Below are positions 5,767 through 54,056 of a stretch of DNA of 64,000 nucleotides, piece after piece. The stretch is taken from NCBI RefSeq assembly GCF_037042905.1, contig NC_087252.1, forward strand, positions 11,904,001 to 11,968,000. Reading direction: 5' to 3'. The position numbers were made by a program, and so were the translations under genes. This DNA is from Lytechinus pictus (Eukaryota). Under the pieces are notes generated by a model. It worked only from the letters and a program-made list of their open reading frames with translations. It did not search any database and was not told the origin of the DNA. Every line of letters begins with the position of its first letter. Position 1 is the first letter of the stretch.

Positions 5767-8700
5767 TTAATTGAAATTATATGTGAAAAGCAGCCCGGAG
5801 ATGAATCCTGGTTGCCAGGCAACGACGAGAGCTGAAGATGTCGTCTGGTTTTGATGGATGATGAGTGGAGAAGGTGAATCTGGTGTGGCTTTGAATATGC
5901 CGAGGAAAAACGAAAAACTTTATCATTATTTCAATACCTGTAAGGATCCTTTTGTTATTGTAGCTATTTTGTTTAGTTCTTTGTTTATGTTTCCGATCCT
6001 TTAACATGTAAAAATTGTGGCATATTACCGATTGCTGTTGTATGATGTTATCTTAGGTTACACGTAGCATATCATTCAGCTGTGAACATTTGTGCCATTG
6101 ATATTAGTCTTTGAAGTAGGCCCGATTATTTTTTAATACATACGCACGCGTAGCACATTCAAACTTACTGGGAGTGGAGGGGTTGAAGACCACGCTGCCT
6201 TCACCGTATCTTGATTTAGCAGTGCAGCGGTAAATACATGGATATTCAGGAACTGGGGTTTGAATTGCCAGTTTTGAAGAGCTCAGGGGTCCGCGTTCTG
6301 GTGAGGTGTCGGTGAGCGAGGTGCGACCGGTAACGTTTAAAATCAGAGTTTCGTTGCAGAGCCATTCGAAGGCAATGACGAGGGGATTTGCATCTGCTGT
6401 ACATATCAACAAGAATCCAGCAGTCCCGCTTGTTTCTTTCGTTGTAAGACGTCGAAGAGCAATAGACACAATGGGGTGATCTAGAATGAAAAAGGTATAC
6501 AAGAAAATTGGAAATGAAATAGACGTGAAATATGAGACAGGTTGACAAAAATTGGTTAAGATTGGTGGTAGATAATTTATTTCTTTTTAGAAAGGTTACT
6601 TGGCAAAGCACTTACTCATTGTCATTGTCCCATATTATTTATCCATTATTATATAGCAAAGGAGCATACCAATTTGTTGGCTCAGTTGGCAGCTGCCGGG
6701 ACCACGCTCAATTGGGCATAGTGAATTTTCAGAGGTTTTTCTTTTTCTGATATATGTTTTGAACAATTAAATACGATTTTTTTTTAATGTAAACAATAAT
6801 CTGACGGATTTCAACAGCATATTCATCATGCCGTAGTCTTTACCATTCTTATTCTGACATTGCACTTACACGATATGGTCAGGACCGTACTGTCATTCAC
6901 AAAACGAGGAAATGGTACTCCAGGTTGAACAGCCACACAGATAAGACACTTTCCATGATCGGATCTCTTGGGAGTGAAGAAAAGTGTACTTTCAGCATCA
7001 TAGATATCAGCTCTGGTTTTACTTATCCGCAGGGATGAGTTAGACGTCACATTGGTTGATCCTAGGTACCAGTGAACGAGGGGGGCCGGGTTCCCATTAA
7101 ACACTCTGCAGGTTACGTTGGTCTCTGCTCCTTCAAAGATACCGTCTTCTGGGAGAGCTATTCCGATCTCGTCTGGTGGTCCTTCAAAGAAACATAAAGC
7201 AGACGATTATCATAGTAAAATTGAAAGCTAAATATTAGATATAGCATCAAAGCATAGCCCGTCCAGTGTTATTTGCGCACCGTTGTAGTCTTAGATGACG
7301 TCAAATCACCAATAGTGAGGCGTCGAATCACCATGATCACCAATAATGACGATATGGATTCAATATAACTATGAATATTATAACGAATACAGTAGCAAGC
7401 TAGTTGTAATTATGTGTATTTTGTAGTAAAAATATATGGTTCATTCTATTCTGAGTAAGCATTATTATTTATCATTAACGTTCTACACACAGAAAAAATT
7501 GTTAATACAACGTTTAAGGAATAAAATCTCACCAAGAACAACAAGTCTAGCTACGCACGGCTTAATAAAGACGCCCTCTATAGATGGGTAGCATACAATG
7601 TGCATTCCATGGTTCTTTTTATCTGGATGTATAGTTATGGTACTTTCAGTGTCAAACAAAGTTCCGTCTAAAACACTGCGAGTCGTTGAAAGGTTTGCGT
7701 AAATTTGAGTATCGTCACCACCGCCATATAACCAGAATGACAGTTCAGTTGCCGGGAATGATCCAATACTTTTACATGTGATTGAAGTCGGTGAATTTTC
7801 ATGAACGTATAGGACGGTTGAATGGGACTGGTAACCTCCAGATTGAAAGAGCAGCACACTTGTAGGCAGAACTCCAAAAAGAAAATAAAAATAAAAAGAG
7901 AGATAAACAGGAAGGAATATGTAAATTAGTTATCCATGCACTAGCGAATGCCAAATCATTATAAACTTAAAATGCCTTTTCATTGGACATTATCATAATG
8001 CTTTACCCTAATTTTCACGTTAAAATGATATATAGAGATGATATACCTATTAACTTACTGATATTCCCTGAAAAATATAACAAAGAGAAAATCCATACCA
8101 TGAACAATGAGATGAACTGAGCATAGAAGTTTATTTTGTAGTCCTGGGTGTGACGCGATGCAGTTAAGAATCGTTTCGTGGTCTTCCCTGGAGGGTGTGA
8201 TAGTCACCGCTTTTCGGGAGATGTAAAATCCGCCTTGAAGAGCATCCGACTGATCCTGATGAACAACAGCCATATCATCTGGTAAACGCCATTTCAGTAG
8301 TGCAGGAGGCATTGCTCCATATACTTCACATGTGATGTTGTATTGATCTCCAGCTATGACAGTCACTGAAAGGTTATTGAAGCAGTAGCGGATCCCCGTG
8401 TCATCAATAATAACGATCACATTCGGTGGATCTGATGATAGAAGTAATGAATACACTCAATATTTTTATTTTAATGAATGCCTTTGTACTTTTCATATTA
8501 ATGATGTACCTCACTAGAATAAAACCTTTTAGTTATTTTTTTTTATAATAACATAGGCCTAACGTAGAACAATCACGTTCAACGTACTCAAAACATAATG
8601 GTTTACAAGGATTAAAAATGGTAGTGGTATTTGACATTTAGAGCTACTTGGATATTTTTTTCATTTTCATTTTAATGTTGAACCTAGTTAGAATAGAATC

Positions 8701-9783
8701 AGTTAAAAATCGATATAACGTACATGTAGACCTGACATAGGACCATATAATGTTTGACAAGCTCAAAACATAATGCCTTACAAGGGTTGAACATTTTACG
8801 TTTATGATATATGAGGTATATGAGCCACCCTACGACAGCGACTGTTAAGTTCGCAACCAAATGCCACTTGCGGTCATTTGGATACCTAGTGTAAAATATT
8901 GTCAGATTATATTTATTTTCGCTACACATATCTATTATGAACTACATGTATGGTTTTGATGTCAAATCGAATGTATATAGCTCCACATTTTTTTCCCCAA
9001 TATCTATTGCTCATGCCGCTATCCGTAATCATTTCTGGTGAGATTTTTTTACTTGTTAGACATTCCATGAAAACATCTGCTGATAAGCAGAAAGGCAAAA
9101 AAAATTATGTCAGACGTAGAATAAGAAAATACAATTGCATAAATCAGCTTTCAATACTTATTTTGCGACTAGCAATGTGAAGGCGACCAATTTGAAAGAA
9201 ATAAATACAAGTATTTTGTCCGCAATGGTAATGATGAGGGTTTTCCGTGTAGTTTATTTACATGAACTTTAATACAACAATAATTTTGGTTTTGTTGTTT
9301 GTTCTTACGAAAATAAAATACTATACTTCACTAGGATTCTCTTTCAGCAATATGCTAATATCAATAGGGGCAATATACATGTACATATAAAACATATACA
9401 AAATTGGTAAAAAAATATATATATATTTTTTTTGTAAACATACGTTAATGACATTGTCATGATAATCGTAAAGTGTCCGAGCCACAGTTTCCAAATTTTT
9501 GGAACTATATTATAATATTTACGGCGAAATTGTGATTTTATTCCTTAATTAGCATTATCAATCAGTTAAAGATAAATTTTGATAATTGGTAAAATTGAAA
9601 ATAAACAAGTTTAAATATAAACCATTCGAACGGCTCACATAATATATCACCCTTAAATATCCATCGTCTTAATTCGCTACGATAAACTTACTAGTATAAT
9701 GCAAATACAACTAAAGACTTACTGCTTGGTGAGATGATTACACACAGTGATAAAACAAGAATTGTTTGAATATAGATGGCCAT
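5767..9783 (-). CDS. Unit I: predicted secreted IgSF protein, SP-C2-C2-C2-I-FN3 stub, ~492 aa (nephrin-like Ig domains)
   Basis: complement(join(9723..9783 MAIYIQTILVLSLCVIISPS, 8099..8431, 7533..7871, 6870..7181, 6169..6480, 5767..5888 ...VVAWQPGFISGLLFTYNFN*)). All introns GT-AG, phase 1; frame open; Ig Cys pairs present. Confidence 0.85.
8782..9079 (-). pseudogene. Possible decayed V-set exon in intron 1 of unit I
   Basis: CAG acceptor at ~9080. Fragments GKNVEL, KYNL...ANLTV and a terminal FNP+T|GTAAAG mirror intact V exons (GENITL, KYSL...GNLTI, VLNP+G|GTAA). Contains stops and frameshifts. Confidence 0.4.
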
Positions 9784-10876
9784 CGTCGTCCAGATATTAC
9801 AAATATGGAAATACCATAAAGTCTTACTGAAGTCTTAGACATTTTACACGGTGGTCAATTATCATTGCAAGTAGATCATCAGTCCATGATCTAATAAGAA
9901 CTATACCGTTTTGAAAAGCTACATACATGTATGGCACTTTGTTGTATCATCTCCTACTTCGATACACGGATTCGGTTTCACATACTTCAAACATCCATCA
10001 CTATGACAGGTATAGGTCTAATGCAATCATGTTGATATTTTGTTTTATCTTTATTTTTTTTGTAAAGTGGGCGCTCTTCCTGCAGAAAATGTGATTAACC
10101 TAAAAGTGGAAATTTAGTATAAGCATATTGAAGCCTACTAATGTAATAACAAAATTCAGGTATAGTACAATTCAACCAATCTGTCTTGTTATTGAACTAA
10201 TGATTTTTTAATGTTCAAACAATGAATTAATACTGGTGGTTTAAGCAGTAATTTGGATAATGGGAATCAAAATTCATACCCCTCAGTTTATTCCACGCTA
10301 TGCCACATTTTTCAGTTTAAATTTTTTTCGCAAATACTGGAGAACTAGTTATTGGATCGCCCAACGTAACAAAAGAGGTCATCAATCAAAATAGGTATGG
10401 CGTTCCCCCATGATTTTCGGGGGGGGGGGGGGGTGGGAAGCAAACAATAATAGTAACAAATGTTTATTTTTTTATATGCAGCAAAAGTTTCGAATTTTAC
10501 CCTTTTCGCTTTCATTGAATTTCTTTACTTTCAATATTTTTTCATCTCCATTCAAAAAATCATTGTCAATTCATTTATTGATTAATTTACTCATTTTTCT
10601 GAGGAGGCAGCCCCGATATCTTTAGCTCTCTCACAAACACGCGCGCATACACGCGCGCACACAATATATAATCTGCACGTCAGGGCCGCTCGATTACATA
10701 GCGATATATCATTTATATAACATAATTACAGAATAGACATTAATTAAAAGTTGTGTTGAATATTAAATATGAAATAACTAATCCACCGAATGTATCTGAA
10801 AACATCGCATTTCCGAGTGTTTATACTGTATAAAGAAATGAAATGTGCGATGGGTTATCTTATCTACAATAAAATT

Positions 10877-13800
10877 CTACATTTTACCGATTTCATGTTT
10901 GTTGATCACATTGTCGATACTTTCTGATTGATACTTTTGTCCAATGATGAATCCTAGCTGCCAGGCAACGAAAAGAGATGAAGATCTCGTCTGGTGTTGG
11001 TAGATGATGAAGACAGAAGGTGGATTCGGGATAACATCTGTAAAAAAAAGATAACATAAACTGTAAATATAAATTTAAGAGGAAATGTTATGAGTATCAC
11101 TGAAATGTCAAAATTAATACTTTTATAATGTTCTGTGTTAAAGCATTATTGATAGGATTACGTGAATATATGGATAATTTTGAGACAATTTTTTAAACAA
11201 TATTTACCCATTTATATTTATTCAGTTCAAAATGAACATAGCAAATTCAATTATTTTACATTGTGGAGGATTCATTAAAAGCCACAGTCTTAAACAATTA
11301 TGATTCTTCCGGTGTAAAAAATATAAAGACAACATCAATTATGTAATAAAAGTTATACAATGTGTTTAGAAATATTTTGATGACATCACTTTATTTGTTA
11401 ATTATCAGACAAACAGAAAATAACCGTTAAACGTACACGAATAAAGGGAATCGAAGGTTGCACTTCCCGAGCCGTATTCTGATTCAGCGGTGCAGTTAAA
11501 AACACAATGATTTTTCGAGAGTTGGTTTTGAATCGCAAATACGCTGGACCTTAGTGTTGCATCTTCAGATATAGTCTGGGGGAGAGTAATGTTATTGGTG
11601 TCCCAGGGCACTACAGTCTCGTTGCAAAGCCAAACGAAGGTATTGACAGGAGGATTGGCGTCCGCTTCACATATCAACACGAGCTCAGTAGTCCCACTTG
11701 CTTTGTGTGAGGTAAGACGTCGAGCAGTGATTGACACAGCAGGATTATCTACATTACAGATACAAAATACAAATTTGCTATAAGTTAATATGAAATGGGA
11801 GAGGCATAAGGTCTGGCAGAGACAAATTATCAAATTTGTTTAGGAAGAAGCAAAGCAGGAAACAAAACATGCAATCATTTTGTAAAAATGTCATTTTGAA
11901 AATTTGTCTCATCGCGACCTTTATCATGTTTATAGTCTCTGAAGGTTAAAAGAAACTTAAAATGCTAAAGTTTTCTTGTACAATATTGTCAATCTTATGA
12001 ACAGACAAGCAAAACAAGAACAAAAAATAGCAACGAGTCAACTTGGTAAACGTGTAAACAGACCGGATCAGTTAGAAATCAAAAGGCTTCCCTTTCTATA
12101 AAACCAGCTTAGTAGTCTTATCAAAAGCATTGCAAGAAACGGTACTTACATGTTACGTTCAGAACCAAGCTTTGATTCACTGAACGTGTAGGTTGAACTG
12201 CCAGGCAGAGAAGACGTTTCCCATGGTCAAACCTCGTCGGTATTAGAGTCAGAGTGCTTTCAGTGTCATATCGACCGGCATTATTTTCACTTATTTTTAA
12301 AGATGAATCCTCTGTAAGATTTCTTGACCCGATGTACCAATGGATATGCGGTGCAGGGTATCCATTAAGAGATCTGCAGGTTACATTTATTTCTATGCCA
12401 TCGTATAGGTCCACAGTAGAGCTCATAATTACGCGTTCTGGTGGGCCTTTAGACGAAACATAAATCGATAAACATTTTTAAATGCCTTGAATATAGGATA
12501 TAAATTTCAGTTCAAAGTCAACCTGCTTAATGTATTATGTAATTTGTAAAAAGGGTTAAAAAACTCCTCTTGCAAACCTTCCCTTTTTTTTAGATTACGT
12601 GAAATTATCAATATTAGCGATGACGAATTGGCCCTTTTAGCAAGGAAAAATGTAAGAAATGTTAAACCACACAGAACTATTAAGAATATGTGTTATCATG
12701 TAAATCATGGCAGTTGGATCACGACTATTAAAGCAATGAATTGATTTTTTTTGTTTGAATAAACATGTCCTTTCAAAAATTAGTAACCGAAAGGGAAGAA
12801 GAAGAATACCTCACCGTAAACGATCACTGTGGCGGACGTAAATCCGACTACGTGTTTTTCAAGTGATGCGTAGCATTGAACGGTCTTCCCATGATGTTTA
12901 ATATTTGGATGTATTGTTACAGTGCTCTCGGTGTCAAACAAAGCATCGTCTAAAACATTCCTTTTGATTGAGGAATTTTCATGGATGGGGATTCTGTCAG
13001 TATGACCAGTACCACTTGTCAACTGAAATGATAGTTTGGTCGCTGGGAATGACCGAATACTTTTACAAGTAATTGAAGTCGGTGAATCTTCTTGAACGTT
13101 AAGTACGGTTGAATTGGACTGGTTTCCTCCAGTTCGAAAGAGCACCACATCCCTTGGCAGAACTTAAAATAAAAACAAAAGGAGACATTTTGAGTGAGTG
13201 AGAGAGATAGAGAGCTAAGGAGGGGGGGGGGGGTATTATGGATGGCATCGAATTTAAACTTTGGTAAATGATATTGAGGAGACTGAAGAGATATGTTTTA
13301 TGTTTTATTACATACATGATATATTTTTTTATGTATATTCTGTCGACATAAAAGTGAAATGATAGCGTAAATCCATCTGCGAAGGAATAACATCGCTTAC
13401 AAATTTTTAAAGGTAAAATATTACAGAGGCGGCAATAAAAGGCTCACTAAAGACTGATACTGACATTTTGAAACAGAAATGACCTGTATTGCATACATAC
13501 CATGAACATTGAGATGAACTGAGCGTAGACGTTCATTTTTTAGTTCTGGGTGTGACGTGATGCAGCTAAGAATCTTTCCGTGGTCATTCATGGAGGGTGT
13601 GATGGCTACCGCTTTTCGGGAGATGTAAGATCCGCCTTGAAGAGCTTCCGACTGATCCTGGTGAACAACAGCCATATCATCCGGTACATGCCATTCCAAC
13701 ACTGCATGGGGATTTGCTCCGTATGCTTCACATGTGATGTCATGCTGTTGACCAGCTATTACCGTTACAGAGAGGTTGTTAAAGGAATAACGGACCCCTG

Positions 13801-14223
13801 TTCCATCAATGATGTAGATCCAAGTGGGTGGAGCTAGCGATAAAAAAATAAGATGTTTTCAGCAGTAAAGTCAGTTGATAAATATATTTTTCTTTCAATT
13901 TCAAAATAATTTTACGTGTTATGATGTAAACTATGGAACATATTTGGAACATCAAGATATTCTCCCTTAATGTTATGATTTCGTTTAAATAGTGGATTCT
14001 CTCTCTAATTGCGTAGGCCCTACATATTTCGATTATCACTAATCGTTAATTGGTTCATACACAGTGTTCATGCCAATTCATACGATCAGTATCTATTTGC
14101 TATGCAAACCTTCTCATCATGCTTTGATGAATCAAATGCAACATATGACTACTTACCGCTTTGTGAGATGATAACCCCAAGGAAAAGTTGAAGAGCTACT
14201 TGTCTAGAAATGGACATTGTCAT
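10877..14223 (-). CDS. Unit H: predicted secreted IgSF protein, SP-C2-C2-C2-I-FN3 stub, ~505 aa
   Basis: complement(join(14157..14223 MTMSISRQVALQLFLGVIISQS, 13501..13833, 12815..13162, 12150..12446, 11437..11748, 10877..11037 ...FVAWQLGFIIG...KM*)). GT-AG, all phase 1, open frame. Confidence 0.85.
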
Positions 14224-14991
14224 TCAGTAATTATCTATGGCAATGCGTGGATGTTCTGTTACGACCGACAGTTGATTCTAAATTCCAACAAAGTGATATC
14301 ACAATATGATATCCTAAAATTACGAAATATGAAATGCTTGGGCAATTATACAATGACACTTCCTCATATTCCCTCCTTACATGGTTTCGGTTTGGCATAC
14401 TTTCTAAGACACCCCTCAACATAACAGGTAATGATGTTAAAGCTTGTTAAGTGGAAAGCAGGCGCTCTTTCGCCAGTGGGCATAAGTAAAATATTATGAT
14501 GTTAAGACACAGACGTAATGGTGCCAAAATAGTATCCACTATATAGAATAACATGGGGTTTTGTGTGACTGTATACTTTTTTTCGAAGTAAATATCAAAA
14601 TAAACAAGCCCGTTTTTCATTGAATTCACACTCAAACAACGAACATAGATAAAAACTGTATATTATTTTTTAAGAATGTATTTGTATTTTGTAAGAGTAA
14701 GCTCAACAGCGCTAAAAGTAGGGGGAAGCGATGCACATGACTAAAGGACGGAAACAGATACTCCTAGATTTGTTTCACACTGTTACGTTTCTTGCAATTA
14801 TATTCTTGGCAAAGTGATCGTTTAACTTCGTACTAATTACAAACAATCTCTTTTTGGTTCTTGGAACTATTTTATAACTTTGGAAATAAAGAACAACGTT
14901 TGATAATAAATGAGGGTAATTTTCAATGACAACGTGTATAATTAATATATAGAGTGATGTTTTTGTCGGATACCCTAATAGTGAATCTAGG

Positions 14992-17900: not shown

Positions 17901-18188
17901 GTCAGTTCATGTCATACATAATAATCTATTCGAAATGGAATTTATTATGAAGTTTTGAAAGTCTCTGAAAAAATTATGATGTCACTTGAATTATTATTTT
18001 TTTTATCTTTCAACAAATTAAAGATTTCGATGGGTAATAATCATAGGTCCGTATACGACAGATCGCCAGTATCTATTTACTACAAACTACTCTTAATGAA
18101 AGAAATTACACAACGCTTCATACTTACAGCTTTTTGAGATGGTAATAACGAATAGAACAAGAGGTACTTGCACAGAAATGGACGCCAT
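14992..18188 (-). CDS. Unit G: predicted secreted IgSF protein, SP-C2-C2-C2-I-FN3 stub, ~479 aa
   Basis: complement(join(18128..18188 MASISVQVPLVLFVITISKS, 17524..17853, 16848..17195, 16169..16477, 15444..15755, 14992..15071 ...LFVAW*)). GT-AG, phase 1, open frame; closest paralog of H, including introns. Confidence 0.85.
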
Positions 18189-19104: not shown

Positions 19105-19943
19105 TTAACATGACTTCATGACATAACCTGGTTGCCAGGCAACGACAATAGATGAAGATTTTGTCTGGTTTTGGTCAACGATGAGCCAGGCAGGTACATC
19201 TGGGATAACTACATGTATATAAAAGGCGGAAACAAAAACCATCAAATGATAGAGTAAGAGTTTAATAGTACAATTCTTATTTTCTTTAACCATAATTCAT
19301 TGTCTTGTTTTTATATTTACTATTTTAATCAAATGTGACGAAATATCATTCAGATGTGACAGTCTGTATTTTTAAACTAACGTATATAGTTATTATAATA
19401 ATTCAATTAGTATTACTTTAGAAAACAGAATATCCAAAATCAAAAATAATATCACAGTTCAACTCACGAAATAACGAAGAATTGAAAACTGCTGATCCTA
19501 ACCCGTATCTGGATACAGCAGTGCAATTGTAAATAGATGGATGTTCAGATGGTCGGCTTCGAATCATCAGGTCACTAGTGGTTACGGTCTCTCTTTCTGC
19601 ATGTTCTGGGCTATTCTCGTGGAGATTCATGTTACTGGTGTCATTGAAGACAATAGCTTCATCACTGAACCATTCAAAGACAACGGCAGGTGGATTGGAA
19701 TCTGCTCTACATGTCAGCGCAAATTCCATAGCCCCATATGTTGTATTTGACTTACGTGAAGTAAGACGTCGAGCAGAAATAGAAACAACTGGTACGTCTG
19801 GAAGCAAATGCGGAAACCTTATAAATCAGCGAGAGCACTAAGTGATAAAAACGAAGGTTTACAACAGAAAGAACAGGAAACGGAATTTAAAAAGGGAATG
19901 ATAGTGTACCCAACATCTCTACTACAGGTATCACTTTATTTTC

Positions 19944-19978
<35 letters not shown>

Positions 19979-36500: not shown

Positions 36501-37169
36501 AAATTATTTTCAGTCGTGTTTCAAACTCTACATGCAATAATATGCAAGACTCAAAGCGCTTTATAACGATCCCACCTTCGACACCATTGTCGTGATAATT
36601 TATTCTAAATATTTCGATGGTTTGGGGAATATTACGTTGTTCTATTTCTTTGCTTTCTTTTGATCTATATATACGGATAGACCTATTATTTCTTTTAAAC
36701 TAATTTGCATTTTCAAGAAATCGGAAAATCAAATTAATTAAGAATATGTTGCACAATATTTACCTGGTGGCAGTACGTTCAGTTCAATTAAACTTGAAAA
36801 TGTATCAACATACGTGGCAACGAAGCAACGATATATGCCGCTATCATCTACCCCTAAACGACGTATTGTCAGGTTTCCACTTGAAGAATCAGACATTAGA
36901 CTGTACTTGGACTCATCTGAAATGTCTTTCTCGTGTGTAGGTTCTATTCCTTCACCTTTATCGCTGGTTGTGATCAGCCTATTGTTATCCACGTGCAGCC
37001 AATACAACGTTCGATGTCTGGATGGAGGTGTGAAGGCGCAAACAAGGGTTATATTCTCGCCAATAACCTGGATAATATCTGAGTTCTGCAGAAAGGTAGA
37101 CACATTCACGCCATATGCTTTAGAAACTGTGAAGATGATGAATACCATTATATGAACGGACAAATTCAT
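33514..37169 (-). CDS. Unit D: IgSF [SP+V]-C2-C2-C2-half I domain, ~521 aa, predicted secreted
   Basis: complement(join(36764..37169 leader and V in one exon with DSGIYRC, 36060..36386, 34852..35190, 34169..34477, 33514..33698 YPPVIVDYSIRR...ILTCRSDSRP...ITW...RMHC*)). GT-AG, phase 1. Confidence 0.85.
35780..35980 (+). mobile_element. tRNA-derived SINE
   Basis: Pol III A box TGGCTGAGTGG (35790-35800), B box GGTTCAATCC (35836-35845), non-tRNA body (GTCCATGAGCAAGGCATTTAATCTAC) and an A-rich end. Confidence 0.8.
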
Positions 37170-37343: not shown

Positions 37344-37676
37344 AATTAAGCTTCATGCAAAAGACGAATAAATAATTGATTGCTCTTGCATTGATTGAAT
37401 TTCTATTCCATGATATTGTTTTAAAAGGTGCTCTAATCGGCAAATGCAATAAAGCAAGAATTTTAGGAAGTTGTCATTTGATACAATGACAGCCCTTACA
37501 TCTATCTTTTAAAAATCATTTTAACTTTCTCGTGTACAATGAATCGATTTTGTACTCGACAACATTAACAAAAATGATAGAAAGAATTTTAAATGATTTT
37601 AATTTGAAAGAAACGTATAAATTAACAATTGAAATGCATTAAAAAGCTATTAAAAATGATCAAATCATATATTATT

Positions 37677-44939: not shown

Positions 44940-47603
44940 ACTTATAGGGTTAAAATTGATATTAAGAATGAAGTACAGGTTCAGGGTGTCTTTGATGACG
45001 AGTGATGTTGAGTTCAGTATACCATTCATGAACCAGGTTACTGAGGCTTACTGGTCTATATACTGTCTGATCTACATGTGAGAACGGCATCAACTGTCGG
45101 ATATTTAATGCATGACGGATGAGGAGTCAACAATATTATTACGGGAGAGTCTAAAATCGGGAGGAAAAGAAAAATCAGAAGAAAACCGTTTTTTAAGATA
45201 TGATTTTGCTTATTAGCGCTAAAGAAAAACAAACTTGCTAGAGATGTATAATGCTATTAATTTTTGTTTTCATAGTAATCTTATACAAAAGGGAACATAG
45301 TCTTATTCAGCATTATTATTGTGGGGCAGAAATGGGGAAAAGGCAGTCTCCAACTGATAATATTACCAGAACGCTCGGCACATTAACATAGAAAATGCAT
45401 GGGAAAATACTACAAAAAATTATTATAATTTTCACTTCGATACCAATAGTTTTTTAATGAAAAATATTGGGTTTACTGTGAGATATTCAGAAGGTAAGTG
45501 AGGACACCCTTTAAAGTTATTAGGTGTATGCATTGGTATGACCCATGAACATGATGAAGCCGGGGAAATGGATCATGCGCATCTCATGCATTTTCAATGT
45601 TGTACATCCACCAATTGGAGATTGTTGCTACTTTTGAATTTGTATACAACCAATCGGAGATAATTGCCACGTTGATTGTTTATAAATCAACAAATTGGAG
45701 ATGATTGCCAATTTAAATTTTGTATATCAACCGATTGGCGATGATTGCCACTTTGAATTTTGTATACCTACCGATTGGCGATGATTGCCTCTTTGAATTG
45801 TGTATATCAACCGATTGAAGGTGATTGCAAGTTTGCATGTTGTATATCAACCACTCGGTAATGGTAACCAGCCCCAACCCCCCCCCCTGCTCGTGACCAA
45901 AAAAAAAAAATAATAATAATAATAAATCTCAACGCTGATTCCTCTGATATGAGTTTCAAGTACTCATCTTCTAAATTTTGAAGGTCCTATCACTACCTAT
46001 CAACAATTTAATAACCATAAAATCACCACCACAAGGCCCCTCATACCCATACTTACAACGACCATAAAGCATAACCGATGAATTGATATCGTGATCAAGC
46101 TCCCGGTGTGAAGCGAAACAATGTAAACTTTTCCATCATCATTCATTGATGGGGTAACAAATACGCCTCTATTAGATGTGTATGCTGCAACATGGACAGA
46201 ATTGAACATATTGAAGGATCGTTAACTCTCCAGGATTTGGCCAGTGCATGCAGTGTTGCAGGAGGCCTGATATCCCGAACAGTTCAACTTATTTTGTGGG
46301 TTTGAACCAAAGCGATTCGTTTTGACTCCCCGTTGTAGTCAGTTTGAGATTGATTGTCAGAAATAGACAAAGTTCTTGGTTTAGCTAGAAGTGAATGAAA
46401 ACAGAAAATATTGACTTTTAGACTAAATGTCCATTAGTGGTCATCTCGTAGGCCTATTTATCTCCAGTGTTTAAAAACATCAAATAACCTAACAACATAT
46501 ACCTGTACAATTTTTGAATCATACTTTTAGTTGTGACTGTGAACATAATAGATGAACAAAAATAGCAGCTCGACCTCGAATTGCTATTCGGTTACGTGGT
46601 TGGCTTTAAATAGAAGTAAAATTTTGAATGATCTATTAAAGATTCTGATCTTTTGATTACAGCTTAAAGTCAACCGATTGAAAAAAAAAAATCAGCAACT
46701 CTCTGTAAGATAGAGCCTTGCTTAGCGGATGGCACTGCTTTTTTGCCCTCTTTATTCGAATATTACATGTTATATTGATTTTGCATCAAAGATACATCAT
46801 CATGTAGTCGTCATGGAATTGAACACATAATAAATTACGGTAGAATCTTTAGAATTGGACCCGTTATGGAATTCAAGTTGTGTCGTGGGAGAAGCTTCCT
46901 TGCCTCTTTCTCACCCTTCGATTTCCGTCTATGCCACACCACACCGTCACTTCACTGGTCGCGTGCTGAGCAGTAGGGGGCAGTAGGACTCTTTTGCCCA
47001 ACGCAATCGTGTTTTACGTACTGTCTCATTGCTTCTCATGTCTACGACTGTTTTTTTATATAGATTATATGTATAGTCATATTCACGTGCGTATTTCTTA
47101 TACTAATTTCCATTGGAAATCTTATGCATATTCTGCACCATCGACGAATACACATTGAAATTGAATTGCATTGGTTTACATTGAATTGAATTAAGAATTA
47201 AATTCTTAATTTACCTGGTAAGAGGACTTCCAAAGCGACTGAACTTCCTTCGATTTAACAATTCAATTTCAATTTCAATTTATTGAACAGATGTGCCTAA
47301 GGAGCAATATAAACCTCTGTCTTCCTATTGCGTACCATGAATAGAAAGGTTGTTGCTTTGTTCGTTTCTGGTTTCCATACCTTTATCAGTAAAGCATCTC
47401 CATACGTTTCTGATATAACCAAGTTAACACACGATTAGTAGATGGTGGGTTAAATGTACAAACAAGGGTAATATCACCTCTCCACCCCTAACGACTGGGT
47501 GGATATCAGGGTTTTGCAGACAGGTAGACACATTCATCCCATGTATCTAAGAAGCTAGGAAGACGATGAAGGTTACAATCAGAAGAGCGAAGCCAAAATT
47601 CAT
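44940..47603 (-). pseudogene. Unit B: pseudogenised duplicate of unit A ([SP+V]-C2a-I)
   Basis: Exons ~47215..47603, 46057..46384 and ~44940..45150 align to unit A exons. Splice sites are retained, but there are frameshifts, an internal deletion and a (CAATTT)n insertion in V. Confidence 0.88.
45596..45870. repeat. 40-bp minisatellite, ~7 copies
   Basis: Units like TGTATATCAACCGATTGGCGATGATTGCCACTTTGAATTT starting at ~45601, 45641, 45681, 45721, 45761, 45801 and 45841. Confidence 0.9.
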
Positions 47604-50229
47604 ACTGCCTGTACTCTTAGAAAAACAGGCGCAAATAGGAACCCCCGAGAAAGAAGATTTTCTTTACGTTTCCTTTATAAGAAATTTAAATGGTTGTATA
47701 AATAACCTAAAAGGCTCCAAGGTTGCTGTTTTAGAACCTTTTACGTAACTTTTTGAGGGTCGAGCATAGAACCCTCGAAGAAAACCTTTTCTAATAGAGT
47801 GCGGTTATGGGTTCTTCTTCTTGGTTTCAAGCAGTTTACCGATATATCTAGAGAAGATGTTCAAAGAGGAAGCAGTTTATTGCATTTTAATGATACAACT
47901 AATACAGATGTAAACGTTGTGGGTTATTTTGTCACAGCGAAAATGAAAGTTATTATTGTCTATTAAGAGGTGATTGATGGTGTTGTCCATAAATTTTTCG
48001 TGACATTATTATCTCGCACATGTCAAATAATATGTATTGATATAGCCCTACCGTATTAAATTAAATTTCTATCAACATTTCTTTAATTTCCATAGTGACA
48101 AGAGAGAAAGAGATAATACAATCATTACTTTAAATATGTATGTTTCAGCCGCGGATCAATGAACTTTATGAAGGGGATTCATATTGTACCAAAATTTTAA
48201 TAATTTAATAAAAAGAAGAATTGTATGAAAATTATTGTTTTTCATTTGATTATTCATAACTCCAAAGAGAGATTGCATATGATAAATTATAATTTCTAAT
48301 GTAAGAAATGACAAGTTCAAATTAGACTAGGATATTCTGGAATGTCTCAATTTCGTTATGTTGTCTTGTCTTTCTGTTTATTCTCACAATGAAAGTTTTA
48401 ATTATCATGGTAAAGTTGAAAAAAGTTGACTGGTTTGCGATGTCTTACTGCGCTGTTGACACAATGTTTTTTATTTAATATTTTGAAAGAAATTTAGCCT
48501 TTTGGCTACTATTAATACTCAATCATTAATTTTGGTTAAGTTTGCCACTGCATTTGTTTTTCATTACTTTGTTTTATGCTACAATTGAATTCAAGTCTAA
48601 ATTTTGTAAATCTGTAATACATTTGTCACATTGCTTGTGTATACTTTTTAATTTAGAGAAAAGTGGAGACGAGTGAGGACAGTCAAGTGGCTCAATTTTT
48701 TCTTCTAAAACAAAACAATCTCCGCCGCCAATCATACTCTACAGGACCTGATGTGGCTGGAAAACATTATGGCGTATCGGATGATTTGAATTCAACTTAA
48801 TCTAGAGATACATGTACTCACTTACAGTACAAATTGATGGTCAGTGGTAACACAACCAAATATATCTAAGAAATAAGAGACCTGTTCCTGTTACGGAACC
48901 CGTTGCATGCTGCGTCTATTCTATCCTATCTCGAATGATAGATAGAACCGTCGCAACTTCCAATCTGACTACCATTGTCTTCAAGATAAATGTAACTTTT
49001 TTTTATTAAATAAGCGTAATATATCCCTTAACTTGTGAAAGATCGAGAAGGGTCCGTTCCTAATTCTGCAATATACTGACACGCCGCCTTATTCAAATGG
49101 CGAAAACTTAAGAAAATAATTATGTAGACTGAAGTTGTTCTAGAGTTCTAAAAGTGGATCAAAAACTGAGATATCAAATAGCAATCCACATTTATCCTGG
49201 AATCATCCAATATTTTTTTTAGAGAGGTAGACGGGGGGGGGGGGGGAAATCATGTTTGTGGTTGTTTGCATGTCTCTACAAATATACATGTAATTAAAAT
49301 TGAATAACGAAAAACCTGGTTTTGACTTCTATCACTTCGCATTGTATGTTTATGTAGTAGTTGTAGTACTTTATTCTTTATTGAAAATCACACCCTTGAC
49401 TTCACAAAGCTGTCAGTACTCGCAACATAAGCCAAAGGTTTAATATGAGTACATTGTAGCTTTACATCAAACTCTCTTACTCTATAACACCAGTTTTCAA
49501 TTCCATTATTTGCCAAGTAACTTAGACCAAACAAAGAGTTTACTTGGATAGCGCACATAATTGACTTTACGAAAAGTACTCCTCAACCTTGCTACAGTTG
49601 TTTTTTTTTTGGTGATAAAAAGGGGGATCCCAACCCATTTCACCCATAACATCATTTTTAGGTGTGTATTTACCACCCCCTCCACAAATAAAACCTAAAC
49701 GCTGAGAAAAATCCACTGTTGATAGAAGAAAACTCCTCTGTGCTCCAAAGATTACTTGCATATACAGTCAAACAATAAACCGAACCACCCAAATGTTTAA
49801 AAATACCGATAATAAGACTCAAAACTCGGGAAGCTAATTAAGCCAGCATTTTGGTACACTTTTGAAACATAAAAAAAGATCGTCAACCAAATACCAAAGT
49901 ATTTGTATGAATCAACAATATGTATGTATATTTACCATTTTAATAGCATATTCTGCTGGAATTTCCAGCAATATCGGCCGTATTATCTGTTCTAGAGGTG
50001 GTTTCTGAATATTTGTAGGCCTATATACATATTTTTCTCAAATCAATTGTACAGTACAAATTATTCATAAAATATATTCTGACCCCCTTGAATCATCGCC
50101 CTCCTTTCCTTCATGAACCAGCAAAACAGGCAAATGGAAAGCGTCTTCCTCAACGTTTTATGATGGACGTTTATTCGACAAAATCTGCGCTTGACAGGTT
50201 GTCAGATCTGACATTTCTGACATCTTGTC

Positions 50230-51217
50230 GAGAGCTGAGAGGCTTTTGTCGAAAGTTGGAGGACCGGGACAGCAATAGCCAATAATCTAGGCGGAGGCTG
50301 CAGTTATTGTTTCGTTTGTTTATTTTTTTTTTTTTTTATATTCTGACCTGAAAGCTTCATATTCTAAGCAGTTTTGGTACCAATGATTAAGATGGGTATC
50401 TAAAAGAACAATAGATGCGACCGCGAATCGCGAGGTGAAAATTTTGATATTTCGATCTGAAAAAAATGACAGTTTAATGTACGTTTTTATAAAAAAAAAA
50501 ACAAGATATATATCCAACAAAAGATTATTGCATTATCGAAGCGGGTGTTCCTTTGAGGTTTAGAACTGAAAACAGGACATTCTTTTCTCCTCTTTGATCA
50601 TGAAAAGTATGGGTTTTTTCGACAGAAATGATGCGAGCGCAAAGCGCAAGCTAAAAATTGTTATATTTCTTTTTTAATCTGAACAGAGGATATTTTGAGC
50701 ACGATTTAAAAAAAGAACGAGTTGGGTATCTCAATCTCGCTTGCTTATTTCTGTGTAACATTACAATATTATTTCATTTTTGCACCAGCGGAATTATTGG
50801 GGGGGGGGGGCAAAACGATACGTTTGCCCCCAAATATTTTCATTGGTTGGGCGATGCCCCCCCCCCCCCCCCAGGATCGACGCCTCTGGCCACCGCCTAT
50901 ACACTCCCGTCTGCCCAATCAATATTCATGTATTCATCTCATCGTTGGACGTGTAGAGGTACCGGTATCCGTACTTGTACCTGTAATTGCTGTCGTGTGC
51001 CAACGACTTGAAATCCTTCGCCTGATCAGACGTATATCTTGCGTTCAGCATAACCGCAAAGACAATAACTGCAGCATCCGCCTTGATTATAGGCTAGGAC
51101 AACAACGGAGTGTCTTGACTCTGAACAGCTATAATTTGCAATTGATCGTCCGGTGTAACTCTTCGGATGATCTCCTGCCCTGGTCCACCAATTTTCGACA
51201 AATGTCACACAGCTCTC
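50230..51217. mobile_element. Non-autonomous DNA transposon with long imperfect TIRs (possibly MULE-like)
   Basis: GAGAGCTGAGAGGCTTTTGTCGAAAGTTGGAGGACCGGGACAG (from 50230) is the inverse of CTGCCCTGGTCCACCAATTTTCGACAAATGTCACACAGCTCTC (to 51217). A second inverted pair: TAGCCAATAATCTAGGCGGAGGCTGCAG / CTGCAGCATCCGCCTTGATTATAGGCTA. Confidence 0.75.
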
Positions 51218-53395
51218 CATTGTGATTTGACTTGCATTTTCAAAAAACTTTGTGCGTTGTAGATAGCGGTTCCGGAGTAAATGCGGAAGGTCTCTATTAG
51301 GAATGAAGTAGGAGGTTTAGGGTGTTTTTGATGACGAGTGCTGTTCTTGTGTTTAGTACCATTCCAGAGCCAGGTTATCGATGCTATTGGTCTACTATCT
51401 GATCTACATGTGAGAATGGCGTCAACTTTTGGTCTGATATTGAATACACGACGAACTGAGAAATCCACGATGACAGGAGAGTCTATAATCGGGATGAAAA
51501 TAAAATTCAAAAGAAAGACATTTTCCACAAATGAAATTTTGCTGATTGGCACTATAAGAACGAAAAATAATGCTTGAAATTAATTATTCTTAATTTTCTT
51601 TCATATTACTCATGAACATACATCACAAGGAAAAAAGTAATTGTGAGATTTATTCAGCATTATCATTTTGGGGTGGTAGGGGGGGGGGGTGTCAGGCTCG
51701 GAAAGCTGACACAGAGAACGCTTGGAAAAATAATATTTAAAATGATGATAAAGTTTCACTTCGATATCAAGATTTTTATTAATTATGAGCCATTAAGAAG
51801 TTAAGTGTAGACAATAATCAGCGTGATTAGGCAATGCATTAATATGAGCCGGGATGCCAGGGAAATGGATCATGCCCATCACATTAATTTTCAATTTTGT
51901 ATATCAACCAATTGGTGATGATCGCCCCCCCCCCCCTGGACGTGAACAAATATCTATATAAAAAACACGCACCTGTCCATATGTGATGTTTGAAATATTA
52001 ATCATATTATCGATTTTTAAAGACATTATCACTGTACCCAACAAGTGAAATCTTCATTAAAATCACCGCACCTAGGCCCATTACTGGTAATCCCAATACT
52101 TACATTGAACAGAAAGTCGAACGGTTGAATTCATATCGTGATCAAGCTCCCGATGTGAAGCGATACAACGTAAAATCTTCCCATCATCATGCCTTGATGG
52201 GGTAACAAATACGGTTCTAATAGATGTGTAGGTGACACCATGGATGGTATTATACTGATCATCTTGACGAATCCTTGCCCATCCAGGATTTATCCATTGC
52301 AGTGTAGCAGGTGGTCTGATCTCTTGAACAACACAAAGTATTGTGTGGGTTTGCCCCAACGTGATGCTTATTGACTCCCCGTTGTGATCGGTTTCAGATT
52401 GATTGTCAGAAATAGACAAAGATCTCGGTCTAGCTAGAAGTAATTAAAACAGATTATTGACTTTTAATCGGATCGAACGGTTCATTAATATCCATGAACG
52501 TGGTCATCACATAGTTCTTTTTTTAATCTACTGTATTCGAAAATTATGAAGTATCTAACAACACATACCTGTAAAAACTATTTGATCATGCCTCAGTTGT
52601 GACCATCAACAAGTTTTGGGCGATTTAAGTTTCCATTCTCTTAATTACATCTTAGAATCAAGCTCATGCAGTTTTATTCAAATATTCAGCAGTTACATGT
52701 ACGATGGGACCATGGTATGTAAATGAAAATGTTATCATGGTTACACAATCTTAATTGGGACCTTTTCTTCGAATGTACACGTTCTGTAGATTTTTTGCAT
52801 CAAATATACATTAAAATAACTAATAAAGGTATTGAATATATAAACATTTTTTCTTAATTCTATCAGAAAAAGTATACAAAATCCATAAAAATACAATTAC
52901 AATAAACAATTAAAGTATACTAAACAATAATAATAATAAGCCGCTTTTATATTGTTCTTAGTGCATCGAAACGACGCGTCAAAGCGCTTTACAGATATAT
53001 CTTTACCCTGGTCATCAGATCAATCAGTCATTCCTGTACACAATGTATGCACATCTTTCACTCCCTGGGGAGTATTCTAGTCAGTCGTCAGTGAGATGCA
53101 CACAGTACTTGGCAAACTAAAATGACTTTTACACCCTACCGGGTACCCATTTAGCAACTGGGTCGAGAGTAGCAAAGTGTAGATTAACGCTTTGCCAAAG
53201 GACGCCAGACCGCGGTTGAATTCGTACACACGACTACCTCACCACGGCTCCTCCACAACAAACAAACATTAAACATAACATATACATATCTTTGTTTTAC
53301 CTTGGAAACTTGGATGGATTATTAACTATTTGTAGCTTTATTCACGTTATGTACTTTTCAAGTTGTATACTGCCTCATTACTTCTTATATAATGC

Positions 53396-53442
<47 letters not shown>

Positions 53443-54056
53443 GGTGTGTGGGTGTGGGTGAGTGTGTGTGTGTGGGTGGGTGTGGGAGTGTGTGTATTTA
53501 TTTCCACTTGTGCAGTTTTCATCTCAATTTCCTTAGGAAATCCCATTTGAGGAAATAAAACCAATATACATATTCTACACCATAGACTAATACAAAGTGA
53601 AATTGAATTGCATTTAATTAAATTGAATTGAATCAAGAATTTACCTGGTAAGAGGGCCTCCAATCTGACTGAACTTCCTTCGACATCTTTAGATATGCGT
53701 ACCGAGCAGATATATAAACCACTGTCATCCTGTTGCAAACCCTGAATAGTAAGGTTTCCGCTTACAGAGTCGGCTATCAAACTGTATTTGGACGTATCTG
53801 AGATGTGTTGTTCATTTTTCGATTTCATGCCATTTTCTTTATCAGTAGCTATTTCCATCACCATACGTTTCTGATATAGCCAGGTTAACACACGATGCGT
53901 AGATAGAGGGTTGAACCTACAAACAAGTGTAATATCATCCCCAACAACTGGAAGAATATCTGGGTTTTGCAGACAGGTAGACACATTCACCCCATGAATC
54001 TTAGAAGCTTGGAAGACGACGAAGGTTACAATCAGAAGAGCGAAGTCAATATTCAT
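51205..54056 (-). CDS. Unit A: IgSF [SP+V]-C2a-partial I, ~339 aa, predicted secreted or incipient pseudogene
   Basis: complement(join(53645..54056 MNIDFALLIVTFVVFQASKIHG...DSGLYIC, 52104..52433, 51205..51482)). GT-AG, phase 1; the last domain lacks its second Cys and the stop lies inside a transposon TIR. Confidence 0.72.
52926..53253 (-). mobile_element. tRNA-derived SINE in unit A intron 1
   Basis: Minus strand starts GGAGGAGCCGTGGTGAGG, has a degenerate B box and a central AAATGGGTACCCGG motif, and ends TGTAAAGCGCTTTG...(TTA)n. Confidence 0.75.

What the first reader, a model, noticed from the sequence alone, without database searches (positions are those of the whole stretch)
5767..54056. 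Tandem array of nine divergent IgSF cassettes, none with a membrane anchor: candidate invertebrate immune/recognition locus
Seen: nine co-oriented units built on SP-(V)-C2-C2-C2-I-FN3. Seven have their own ATG, a hydrophobic leader and an open spliced frame; paralogous domains are strongly diverged and rich in N-x-S/T sequons. I found no TM or cytoplasmic exon in any spacer. Known: Ig+FN3 ectodomains of this nephrin-like type are normally membrane-bound, and fast-evolving tandem IgSF clusters with pseudogenes (Hydractinia Alr, mammalian SIRP, CEACAM/PSG) act in recognition. Inference: a birth-and-death family of secreted recognition or decoy proteins derived from a receptor ectodomain.
Basis: partly seen in the sequence, partly recalled or inferred. 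Interest (0 to 1): 0.85.

Follow-up and report, generated by a model that had tools for sequence, protein, structure and literature searches.

The report
Sea-urchin array of truncated secreted Ig genes
The window is a slice of a 630-kb row of more than sixty sea-urchin (Lytechinus pictus) antibody-fold genes, most of them cut-down copies of a membrane receptor that have lost their anchor, are still kept intact by selection, and should be secreted; what they do has not been tested.

Summary
Nine co-oriented Ig-exon units lie on the minus strand at 5767-54056. Eight give ATG-to-stop spliced frames of 271-603 aa with a leader, 6-15 N-x-S/T sequons and no membrane helix. U2 is broken.

Corrections:
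- The "FN3" is only the first ~85 nt of an FN3 exon, broken at one shared point in U3 and U6-U9.
- U1, U2 and U4 are broken inside the I exon.
- U5 ends after C2c.

The genome is Lytechinus pictus. The window sits in an array of 63 such cassettes, all on the minus strand (C8:11.71-12.34 Mb). Only seven cassettes keep a full FN3 plus membrane-proximal domain, and five keep a recognisable TM exon. The nearest TM exons are 10 kb above and 35 kb below the window.

Evidence that the truncated copies are genes:
- dN/dS is 0.33-0.56.
- Neutral simulation almost never keeps these frames open.
- Spliced RNA-type contigs from a close relative confirm all five U8 introns and an unspliced 3' end.
- L. variegatus RefSeq has the same truncated build.

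Best reading: a birth-and-death family of secreted ectodomain-only paralogues of a SYG-2/nephrin-like receptor. An immune or decoy role is untested.

First readers of two neighbouring windows (s1-329183, s1-319997) proposed a protocadherin-like variable-cassette locus. My evidence disfavours that but does not exclude it. I found no paper on this array.

The parts
51205..54056 (-). U1, 339 aa. The leader and V domain share one exon (54056-53645). C2a is 52433-52104. The terminal exon is half an I exon plus an unrelated tail, ending in a stop (51482-51205). C2b and C2c are absent.
   Evidence: All junctions are AG/GT.
45008..47663 (-). U2, a pseudogene of the U1/U4 type. The V exon (47663-47214) has four in-frame stops and a frameshift. 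A C2a fragment lies at 46221-46003 and an I-exon fragment at about 45134-45008.
37677..41095 (-). U3, 271 aa. Leader exon 41095-41041, C2b 40546-40199, C2c 38332-38024, FN3-relic terminal exon 37780-37677. V, C2a and I are absent.
33514..37169 (-). U4, 521 aa. Leader plus V 37169-36764, C2a 36386-36060, C2b 35190-34852, C2c 34477-34169, half-I terminal exon 33698-33514.
   Evidence: The DNA homology with U1's I exon ends at the same point, 33545 against 51329.
25537..29937 (-). U5, 469 aa. Leader exon 29937-29889, V 29230-28880, C2a 27961-27629, C2b 27238-26897, C2c 25871-25537. The usual C2c donor is weakened to GTCAGA. No I or relic exon was found, and reading through gives a stop after 12 codons.
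19105..23492 (-). U6, 603 aa, the fullest unit. Leader 23492-23444, V 23113-22775, C2a 21916-21584, C2b 21251-20910, C2c 20390-20076, I 19797-19468, FN3-relic terminal exon 19208-19105.
   Evidence: RefSeq XP_063959350 (P0001) covers part of it at 100%.
14992..18188 (-). U7, 479 aa, no V domain. Leader 18188-18128, C2a 17853-17524, C2b 17195-16848, C2c 16477-16169, I 15755-15444, FN3-relic terminal exon 15071-14992.
   Evidence: The C2c-to-I junction 16169|15755 is seen in an RNA-type contig.
10567..14459 (-). U8, 505 aa, no V domain. Exon 1 runs from at least 14459 to 14157, with the ATG at 14223. C2a 13833-13501, C2b 13162-12815, C2c 12446-12150, I 11748-11437. The FN3-relic terminal exon starts at 11037, has its stop at 10879-10877, and its 3'UTR runs to about 10567. 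An AATAAA lies at 10579-10574.
   Evidence: All five introns appear as GT-AG joints in spliced contigs of three runs. ORF. Colinear 3' end. Hexamer.
5767..9783 (-). U9, 492 aa, no V domain. Leader 9783-9723, C2a 8431-8099, C2b 7871-7533, C2c 7181-6870, I 6480-6169, FN3-relic terminal exon 5888-5767.

Best explanation
The window holds nine consecutive members of a tandem array of at least 63 echinoid-specific IgSF genes on Lytechinus pictus contig C8. The array spans about 630 kb and every member is on the minus strand.

The ancestral gene type is a type I membrane receptor: leader, V, three CD80-like C2 domains, an I-type Ig, one or two FN3 domains, a Cys-containing membrane-proximal domain, a TM helix and a tail. 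Its closest solved relative is C. elegans SYG-2 domains D1-D4.

Two old duplication or deletion breakpoints produced copies that keep their own promoter and leader exon but lose everything 3' of the break. One lies about 85 nt into the FN3 exon (U3, U6-U9). The other lies about 154 nt into the I exon (U1, U2, U4).

The broken exon now serves as the terminal exon. It supplies a short tail, a stop codon and a 3'UTR. These truncated units were then amplified by unequal crossing-over, with exchange of exons between units.

Shown:
- the anatomy of the units;
- the shared breakpoints;
- open frames under purifying selection;
- splicing and a colinear 3' end for a U8-like transcript;
- the same build in L. 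variegatus.

Inferred: the products are secreted, heavily N-glycosylated Ig-only proteins. They would act outside the cell as soluble counterparts of the membrane-bound paralogues, either as competing ligands or decoys for whatever those receptors bind, or as humoral recognition proteins.
For: Anatomy:
- Nine units and their Pfam Ig families.
- GT-AG models, open from ATG to stop, with no TM.
- Own leader exons.

Array context:
- 63 C2c exons lie on C8:11.706-12.336 Mb, all on the minus strand.
- Only 7 complete FN3 and 7 membrane-proximal exons and 5 TM exons lie in that span.
- TM exons flank the window at C8:11978440-11978249 and C8:11868840-11868649.

Shared breakpoints:
- The FN3-exon breakpoint is the same in U3 and U6-U9.
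- The I-exon breakpoint is shared.

Selection:
- dN/dS is 0.33-0.56 with dS 0.33-1.4. Every computable exon value is below 1.
- Neutral simulation keeps a 505-codon frame open in at most 0.05% of replicates at 0.13-0.16 substitutions per site.
- The 85-nt relic stays 57-90% identical to the intact FN3 exon, while the sequence just past the break is random. This argues that the relic is translated.

Transcripts and relatives:
- Spliced contigs of three runs from two studies give all five U8 introns and a last exon that runs on colinearly for about 470 nt, ending next to an AATAAA.
- L. variegatus RefSeq nephrin-like X1/X2 (504/495 aa) has the same leader-C2a-C2b-C2c-I-relic build.
- RefSeq models of this species map to compact local genes, not long-range joins.
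Against: - The RNA-type contigs are only 92-95% like the window. They show a close allele, paralogue or sister-species orthologue, not these very copies. Their being RNA is inferred from the clean GT-AG joints.
- Only U8 (fully) and U7 (one junction) have transcript support. U1, U3 and U5 are odd partial builds and may be decaying.
- No tissue, challenge, protein or binding data exist, so secretion and function are inferred from sequence.
- Poly(A) hexamers are common in this AT-rich DNA, and U7 has none in its 769-nt spacer.
- In the C2c tree the full-length gene of P0013 nests inside the clade of truncated cassettes. A single origin of truncation therefore rests on the shared breakpoint, not on the tree.
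- Minor isoforms that skip the relic exon cannot be excluded.
Confidence: 0.65

Rival explanations
1. Variable-cassette locus of the protocadherin, UGT1A or chelicerate sDscam type. Each unit would be an alternative, promoter-bearing 5' cassette whose last Ig exon is cis-spliced over the downstream units to one shared constant region (FN3, membrane-proximal domain, TM, tail). That region lies 19-35 kb below the window. The products would then be membrane receptors with alternative ectodomains.
For: - The layout fits. Blocks of anchor-less cassettes, each with its own leader exon, all in one orientation, are followed downstream by one FN3/membrane-proximal/TM set.
- All Ig exons are phase 1, so any join stays in frame.
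- First readers of two neighbouring windows proposed this reading. Those notes are unchecked.
Against: - In the spliced contigs the I exon joins the local relic exon. That exon then runs on unspliced for about 470 nt to an AATAAA.
- The relic's coding part is conserved while the sequence just after it is random. This is not expected for a skipped exon.
- Each unit has its own in-frame stop.
- Many competing acceptors lie between a cassette and the distant FN3 exon.
- The L. pictus and L. variegatus RefSeq models I mapped are local genes or end in the relic.
- Full-length genes also sit directly upstream of cassette blocks. Simple duplication mechanics predicts truncated copies followed by one full copy.
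Confidence: 0.12
2. Transcribed but functionless debris. The units would be truncated by-products of unequal crossing-over that are still transcribed and spliced, but whose products are degraded or useless.
For: - U2 is dead.
- U1, U3 and U5 lack exons.
- U4 and U1 end in half an Ig domain with an unpaired Cys.
- dN/dS of 0.33-0.56 is relaxed compared with typical housekeeping genes.
Against: - Eight frames of 271-603 codons are open at dS 0.33-1.4. Neutral simulation gives at most 0.05% survival even at the smallest divergence.
- dN is below dS in every exon and pair where both could be computed.
- Splice sites are conserved in all units.
- The same truncated build is conserved in L. variegatus.
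Confidence: 0.1
3. Read-through multi-cassette genes. Neighbouring units would be spliced in series, with the I exon of one unit joined to the first Ig exon of the next and its leader exon skipped. This would give long secreted or anchored chains of repeated four-Ig blocks, so there would be far fewer genes than nine.
For: - All exons are phase 1.
- Several RefSeq or other predicted proteins of sea urchins fuse cassettes: P0002 (746 aa), P0008, P0022, and P0014 (3688 aa with 24 matched stretches).
- Spacers between units are short. U3's stop lies 508 nt from U4's ATG.
Against: - Every unit has its own ATG, leader exon and donor.
- The U8-like contig starts in U8's own exon 1, with about 236 nt of 5'UTR.
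- No joint from U7's last exons to U8's C2a exon was listed on the 6-kb stretch.
- Fused models may be prediction artefacts in a repetitive array.
Confidence: 0.06

Closest known systems
Nephrin / SYG-2 / Sns-Hibris and Kirrel / SYG-1 cell-recognition IgSF receptors
   Same: - An N-terminal V-like domain is followed by CD80-like C2-set domains, then FN3, TM and a tail with tyrosine motifs in full-length family members.
- The best solved match of a full-length member is SYG-2 D1-D4 (4ofy, E 4.8e-15).
- RefSeq names the genes nephrin-like, syg-2-like or KIRREL-like.
   Different: - Identity to true nephrins is only 21-23%.
- S. purpuratus has a separate true nephrin gene (PMC12113024).
- Full-length members have 4-5 Ig domains, not 8-9, plus an extra membrane-proximal domain with no Pfam match.
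- The window's units have no FN3 domain, TM or tail, and U7-U9 even lack the V (D1) domain. From my own knowledge, D1 makes the SYG-1/SYG-2 contact.
CEACAM/PSG, LILR and SIRP clusters of mammals (receptor families with secreted or anchor-less paralogues)
   Same: - A tandem, one-orientation IgSF cluster evolving by birth-and-death.
- Membrane-bound and anchor-less secreted members sit side by side.
- Pseudogenes, partial copies and exon exchange between paralogues are present.
   Different: - No sequence orthology.
- The anchor-less members outnumber the anchored ones by about 8 to 1.
- They trace to two exon-internal breakpoints whose relics became the terminal exons.
- No functional data exist.
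Hemolin of Lepidoptera
   Same: A secreted four-Ig protein thought to derive from the N-terminal Ig domains of a neural adhesion receptor (neuroglian). This statement is from my own knowledge and was not tested here. U7-U9 are likewise four-Ig secreted derivatives of an adhesion-type receptor.
   Different: - Hemolin is a single gene with a proven immune induction.
- This locus holds tens of paralogues, from a different Ig lineage, with function unknown.
Clustered protocadherins and chelicerate sDscam (tandem 5' cassettes spliced to constant exons)
   Same: Tandem promoter-bearing cassettes in one orientation lie upstream of a single FN3/TM module.
   Different: The cassettes here carry their own terminal exon, stop and 3'UTR. 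The available spliced contigs use it. No long-range join was seen.
Hydractinia Alr allorecognition complex
   Same: A large invertebrate cluster of divergent IgSF genes with pseudogenes. The paper was listed (PMC9546547); I did not read it.
   Different: From my own knowledge, Alr proteins are membrane-bound with unusual V-like domains. There is no sequence relation, and no allorecognition biology is known for sea urchins.

Membership tests
Immunoglobulin superfamily (V-set, CD80-like C2-set_2) | Domains that score above Pfam's curated cut-offs. | tested here: met
   V-set scores 37.7-40.9 bits against a cut-off of 26. C2-set_2 scores 24.9-51.5 bits against a cut-off of 21 on single exons. The I exon is weak: Ig_3 at 17-25 bits, below the cut-off of 30.
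Immunoglobulin superfamily (V-set, CD80-like C2-set_2) | A conserved Cys...Trp...Cys core, with one domain per phase-1 exon. | tested here: met
   Alignments of each exon class show invariant C, W and C columns. All internal exons are multiples of 3 in phase 1.
Nephrin / SYG-2 / Sns family | Architecture of 8-9 Ig domains plus one FN3, a TM and a cytoplasmic tail. | tested here: not met
   Window units have 2-5 Ig domains, no FN3 domain, no TM and no tail. Full-length relatives have 4-5 Ig, 1-2 FN3, an extra domain and a TM.
Nephrin / SYG-2 / Sns family | Orthology to nephrin (closest relative across phyla). | tested here: not met
   The full-length member P0051 matches nephrins at 21-23% identity, E 1e-15 to 2e-23, against 35-76% within echinoids. 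S. purpuratus has a distinct nephrin, LOC592278, at E 8e-122 to human nephrin (PMC12113024).
Nephrin / SYG-2 / Sns family | Ig1-4 region recognisably like SYG-2. | tested here: met
   phmmer against the PDB gives SYG-2 D1-D4 (4ofy) as the best hit, E 4.8e-15 over residues 32-400 of P0051.
Variable-cassette receptor locus (Pcdh / UGT1A / sDscam type) | Tandem cassettes, each with its own first exon and promoter. | tested here: met
   Leader exons with ATG and donor precede U3 and U5-U9. U1 and U4 carry the leader in the V exon. The U8-like contig begins in U8's exon 1. Promoters themselves were not tested.
Variable-cassette receptor locus (Pcdh / UGT1A / sDscam type) | The last cassette exon is spliced to shared downstream constant exons, and there is no terminator inside the cassette. 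| tested here: not met
   The I exon joins the local relic exon, which has a stop and runs on colinearly for about 470 nt. The mapped RefSeq models are local. The test is limited to one 6-kb stretch, contigs only, and a 92-95% relative.
Variable-cassette receptor locus (Pcdh / UGT1A / sDscam type) | One constant region downstream of the cassette block. | tested here: met
   FN3 at C8:11885496, the membrane-proximal exon at 11883491 and the TM exon at 11868840 lie below the window.
Birth-and-death multigene family | Intact, partial and dead copies together, duplicates of different ages, and purifying selection on survivors. | tested here: met
   U2 is dead and U1, U3 and U5 are partial. dS ranges from 0.33 to above 1.4. 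Identical exon pairs lie 40 kb apart elsewhere in the array. dN/dS is 0.33-0.56.
Secreted protein | An N-terminal signal peptide, no TM helix and no C-terminal GPI-type hydrophobic tail. | tested here: inconclusive
   Hydrophobic leaders of 16-22 residues are followed by small residues. There is no hydrophobic 19-mer afterwards, and the C-termini are polar or short. No signal-peptide predictor or protein data were available.

The most novel reading that the evidence does not exclude
The anchor-less units are alternative, promoter-bearing multi-exon 5' cassettes. Besides the local secreted form, they would be cis-spliced over tens of kilobases onto a shared FN3/membrane-proximal/TM/tail region. 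That would be a deuterostome invertebrate counterpart of clustered protocadherins or chelicerate sDscam. Each cassette would yield both a secreted and a membrane isoform, depending on whether the relic exon is used.
Probability: 0.12. Interest if true: 0.85.

Novelty: new member of a known kind. Interest (0 to 1): 0.55.

Why it matters
Sea urchins are known for huge innate-receptor repertoires (TLR, NLR, SRCR, SpTransformer). A 630-kb IgSF array in which about 56 of 63 cassettes are selected, anchor-less derivatives of a SYG-2/nephrin-like receptor appears not to have been described. It would add a large soluble Ig repertoire to that picture.

It is also a clean natural example of how an exon-internal breakpoint can turn a receptor gene into a secreted gene. 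The broken exon is recruited as the terminal exon, and the new form then amplifies and exchanges exons.

Whether the products serve immunity, gamete or larval recognition, or tissue adhesion can be tested directly in L. pictus, which is a genetically tractable urchin.

Tried and rejected
- A search for RNA runs with an 8-kb stretch listed none. A second search with 3.5 kb listed only runs holding 5-7% of the words.
- The look-up of encoding contigs for P0007 and P0051 returned nothing, because records of this or near genomes are withheld.
- I looked for the rest of the FN3 exon, the membrane-proximal domain and the TM exon inside the window. Only the relics were found.
- I looked for an I or relic exon in U5, and for I or C2a in U3. 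None was found.
- The cytoplasmic tail of the S. purpuratus-type protein P0051 has no detectable match in this genome. The tail exons of the L. pictus full-length genes were therefore not defined.
- KirrelL, the echinoderm skeletogenic fusion gene, was considered and rejected because it is intronless (PMC8903837).
- Five literature searches found no paper on this array. The L. pictus infection paper does not mention these genes and has no held supplements.
- Poly(A) hexamers are too common in this AT-rich DNA to be evidence, except where one coincides with the contig end in U8.
- I ran no structure prediction or complex prediction. The spliced models cannot be passed by reference, and I claim no binding.

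Full report
WHAT IS IN THE WINDOW

The window is AT-rich (31-42% G+C per 2-kb window) eukaryotic DNA with exon-sized open frames, mostly on the minus strand. Pfam assigns these frames to V-set and CD80-like C2-set_2 Ig domains, with single-exon E-values down to 1e-13.

tblastn with the exon translations sorts them into five classes (V, C2a, C2b, C2c, I). It maps nine co-oriented units, U1 at the high end to U9 at the low end. Alignments of each class show the conserved Cys/Trp/Cys core and conserved exon ends.

GENE MODELS

Enumerating phase-1 acceptors and donors at the homologous positions gave models with AG/GT at every junction. I then searched for ATG plus hydrophobic-core plus donor exons upstream of each unit.

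Eight units are open from ATG to stop:
- U1 339 aa
- U3 271 aa
- U4 521 aa
- U5 469 aa
- U6 603 aa
- U7 479 aa
- U8 505 aa
- U9 492 aa

U2 has stops and a frameshift.

The models carry 6-15 N-x-S/T sequons. They have no hydrophobic 19-mer after the leader and no hydrophobic C-terminus.

U7-U9 have a leader exon spliced directly to C2a and so have no V domain. The L. variegatus RefSeq protein XP_041471360 has the same build.

THE "FN3" IS A RELIC, AND THE ARRAY IS MUCH LARGER

A single-exon phmmer search of 1.8 billion proteins found only 138 relatives. Some of them continue past the I domain into a complete FN3 domain and a further Cys-containing domain (P0013, P0004). Against the window these C-terminal parts match only the first 20-50 residues of FN3, and a stop follows.

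In the window's own genome the C2c exon has 71 matches. Sixty-three lie on contig C8 between 11,705,656 and 12,335,760, all on the minus strand. In that span there are only:
- seven complete FN3 exons and seven membrane-proximal-domain exons;
- five TM exons.

I fetched the flanks and compared the regions downstream of two complete 3' modules by tblastx. This found a conserved TM exon: a hydrophobic helix followed by CC-T-K-x-K-K and a strong donor. It lies at C8:11978440-11978249, 10 kb above the window's end, and at C8:11868840-11868649, 35 kb below its start. The window has no homologue of it.

A full-length relative (P0051, 865 aa) runs leader-V-C2a-C2b-C2c-FN3-FN3-extra domain-TM-tail, with two YMDL motifs in the tail.

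ORGANISM AND FAMILY

P0013 is 100% identical to C8:11986550 and is named LOC129267188 of Lytechinus pictus. P0035 lies on a contig of 42,376,555 bases, which is the length of C8. The genome is therefore L. pictus.

Relatives at 35-76% identity are all from sea urchins (S. purpuratus, L. variegatus, L. pictus, Diadema). They are named automatically as nephrin-like, syg-2-like, NCAM1-like, KIRREL-like or CD22-like. True nephrins match at only 21-23%. The best solved relative is SYG-2 D1-D4. S. purpuratus has a separate true nephrin (PMC12113024). Five searches found no paper on this array.

HOW THE TRUNCATED UNITS AROSE

I aligned the relic exons of U3, U6, U7, U8 and U9 with two intact FN3 exons. 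Identity is 57-90% up to one point, just after GCCTGGCAACCAGG and about 85 nt into the exon. Beyond that point identity is random in all five.

U1, U2 and U4 share a different break, about 154 nt into the I exon. A RefSeq paralogue model (P0035) ends at that same place.

So there are two truncated lineages, each from one event, later amplified. A tandem duplication of a segment that ends inside a gene leaves truncated copies upstream of one full copy. That matches the observed layout: blocks of truncated cassettes, each followed downstream by a full-length gene.

A maximum-likelihood tree of 65 C2c exons gives two main groups:
- A clade of 48 (support 90/86) holds U3, U5-U9 and nearly all other FN3-truncated cassettes.
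- A clade of 16 holds 9 of 11 full-length genes plus the I-truncated type, including U4.

The full-length gene of P0013 nests within the first clade. Single origin therefore rests on the shared breakpoint, and that gene may be ancestral-like or a recombinant.

Each window unit has its nearest relative elsewhere in the array (for example U6 with 12098238 and U9 with 12053460). The order U6-like, several U7/U8-like, then U9-like recurs at 12.05-12.10 Mb, which points to block duplication. Two C2c exons 40 kb apart are identical, so duplication is ongoing.

Exon-wise dS differs several-fold within the same pair of units. For U8-U9, C2a is 0.41 against about 1.0 elsewhere. For U5-U9, C2a and C2b are 0.43-0.55 against 1.9 for C2c. 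Units have therefore exchanged exons.

ARE THE UNITS ALIVE?

- Whole-gene dN/dS (Nei-Gojobori) is 0.56 for the youngest pair, U7-U8. Their dS of 0.33 is about equal to their intron divergence, since the introns align at 74%. For the other pairs where it could be computed, dN/dS is 0.33-0.38.
- Every exon value that could be computed is below 1.
- A neutral simulation on U8's coding sequence keeps the frame open in at most 0.05% of replicates at 0.13-0.16 substitutions per site, and never at 0.3.
- Introns are unalignable between most units while exons, splice sites and the 85-nt relic are kept.

TRANSCRIPTS

Contigs of three runs of a coded organism A, from two studies, lie on U8 at 92-95% identity. 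Their clean CT..AC joints correspond to GT..AG on the minus strand. The joints are 14157|13833, 13501|13162, 12814|12445, 12150|11748 and 11441|11037, plus 16169|15755 in U7. These are exactly the model's introns.

One 864-nt contig runs from C2c through I into the relic exon and on for another 246 letters. Those letters match the genome just below 10813. The last exon is therefore unspliced for about 470 nt, and the contig ends about 7 nt past an AATAAA at 10579-10574.

Another contig starts in U8's own exon 1 at 14459 or above. DNA-type runs of organism B show no such joints.

These contigs come from a near relative or allele, so they show the gene type is expressed and spliced in this way. 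They do not show that these particular copies are.

RIVAL READINGS

The layout invites a protocadherin/sDscam-like reading, in which cassettes are spliced to a shared constant region. First readers of the two neighbouring windows proposed it (s1-329183, s1-319997). Against it:
- the observed local terminal exon with stop and 3'UTR;
- the selective maintenance of the relic's coding part;
- the many intervening acceptors;
- RefSeq models that map as compact local genes (P0164 at C8:11779987-11785262, P0024 at C8:12238240-12240938) or end in the relic.

I cannot exclude minor long-range isoforms, because only one 6-kb stretch could be laid with contigs.

Read-through fusion of neighbouring units is suggested by some predicted proteins (P0002, P0008, P0022). 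It is not seen in the contigs.

Functionless debris is contradicted by the selection evidence.

FUNCTION

Function is inferred only. The products should be secreted, glycosylated chains of two to five Ig domains with a short non-domain tail. By analogy with PSG/CEACAM, soluble LILR and hemolin, the likeliest role is as soluble counterparts of the membrane paralogues, either as competing ligands or decoys or as humoral recognition proteins.

The V-less units (U7-U9) lack the domain that mediates SYG-1/SYG-2 binding (my own knowledge). They would have to act through other surfaces. No immune link was found.

VERDICT

- This is a new, apparently undescribed member of a known kind of locus.

Noticed in passing
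window 6870-8431 (U9), 25537-29230 (U5), 11437-13833 (U8), 15444-17853 (U7): Synonymous divergence differs several-fold between exons of the same pair of units. U5's V is closest to U6's, while its C2a and C2b are closest to U9's. U8-U9 C2a has dS 0.41 against about 1.0 for the other exons. Units have exchanged exons by gene conversion or unequal crossing-over.
   Followed up: partly
G000 C8:11984741-11984496 and C8:11883491-11883252 (outside the window); P0051 residues 636-711: Full-length family members carry a conserved Cys-containing domain of about 85 residues between FN3 and the TM helix. It has no Pfam match.
   Followed up: no
P0051 C-terminus (sea-urchin protein from a metagenome-type source, 76% identical to an S. 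purpuratus RefSeq protein): The cytoplasmic tail ends with two YMDL motifs 19 residues apart, which resembles an immunoreceptor tyrosine motif with long spacing. No match to this tail was found in the L. pictus genome at E 1e-5.
   Followed up: partly
G000 C8:12205519-12205932 and C8:12245133-12245546: Two C2c exons 40 kb apart are identical in translation. Several further pairs are nearly identical. This indicates very recent block duplication in the 12.11-12.29 Mb part of the array.
   Followed up: partly
window 63-470 (+), 58614-59237 (-), 60614-61708 (-), 63387-63998 (+): Reverse-transcriptase (RVT_1) fragments of retroelements flank the Ig units on both sides (E 2e-7 to 3e-25).
   Followed up: partly
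window 41002-41643 (+): A 214-aa open frame on the plus strand overlaps U3's leader exon in antisense. It has no Pfam match. U3 has lost its V and C2a exons in this same region.
   Followed up: partly
window 53388-53500 and 35935-36050 (minus strand): CA/TG-type microsatellites sit directly after the donor sites of U1's V exon and U4's C2a exon. They read as His-Thr runs in frame.
   Followed up: no
window 43358-43536: Another first-reader note (s1-325047) places a 7SL-derived SINE here, in the spacer between U2 and U3. I did not examine it.
   Followed up: no
G000 C8:11898039-11868649 (6-35 kb below the window's start): The next gene downstream has V and C2a exons. A gap of about 11 kb without Ig exons follows, then the complete FN3, membrane-proximal and TM exons. 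This is an unusually stretched full-length member.
   Followed up: partly
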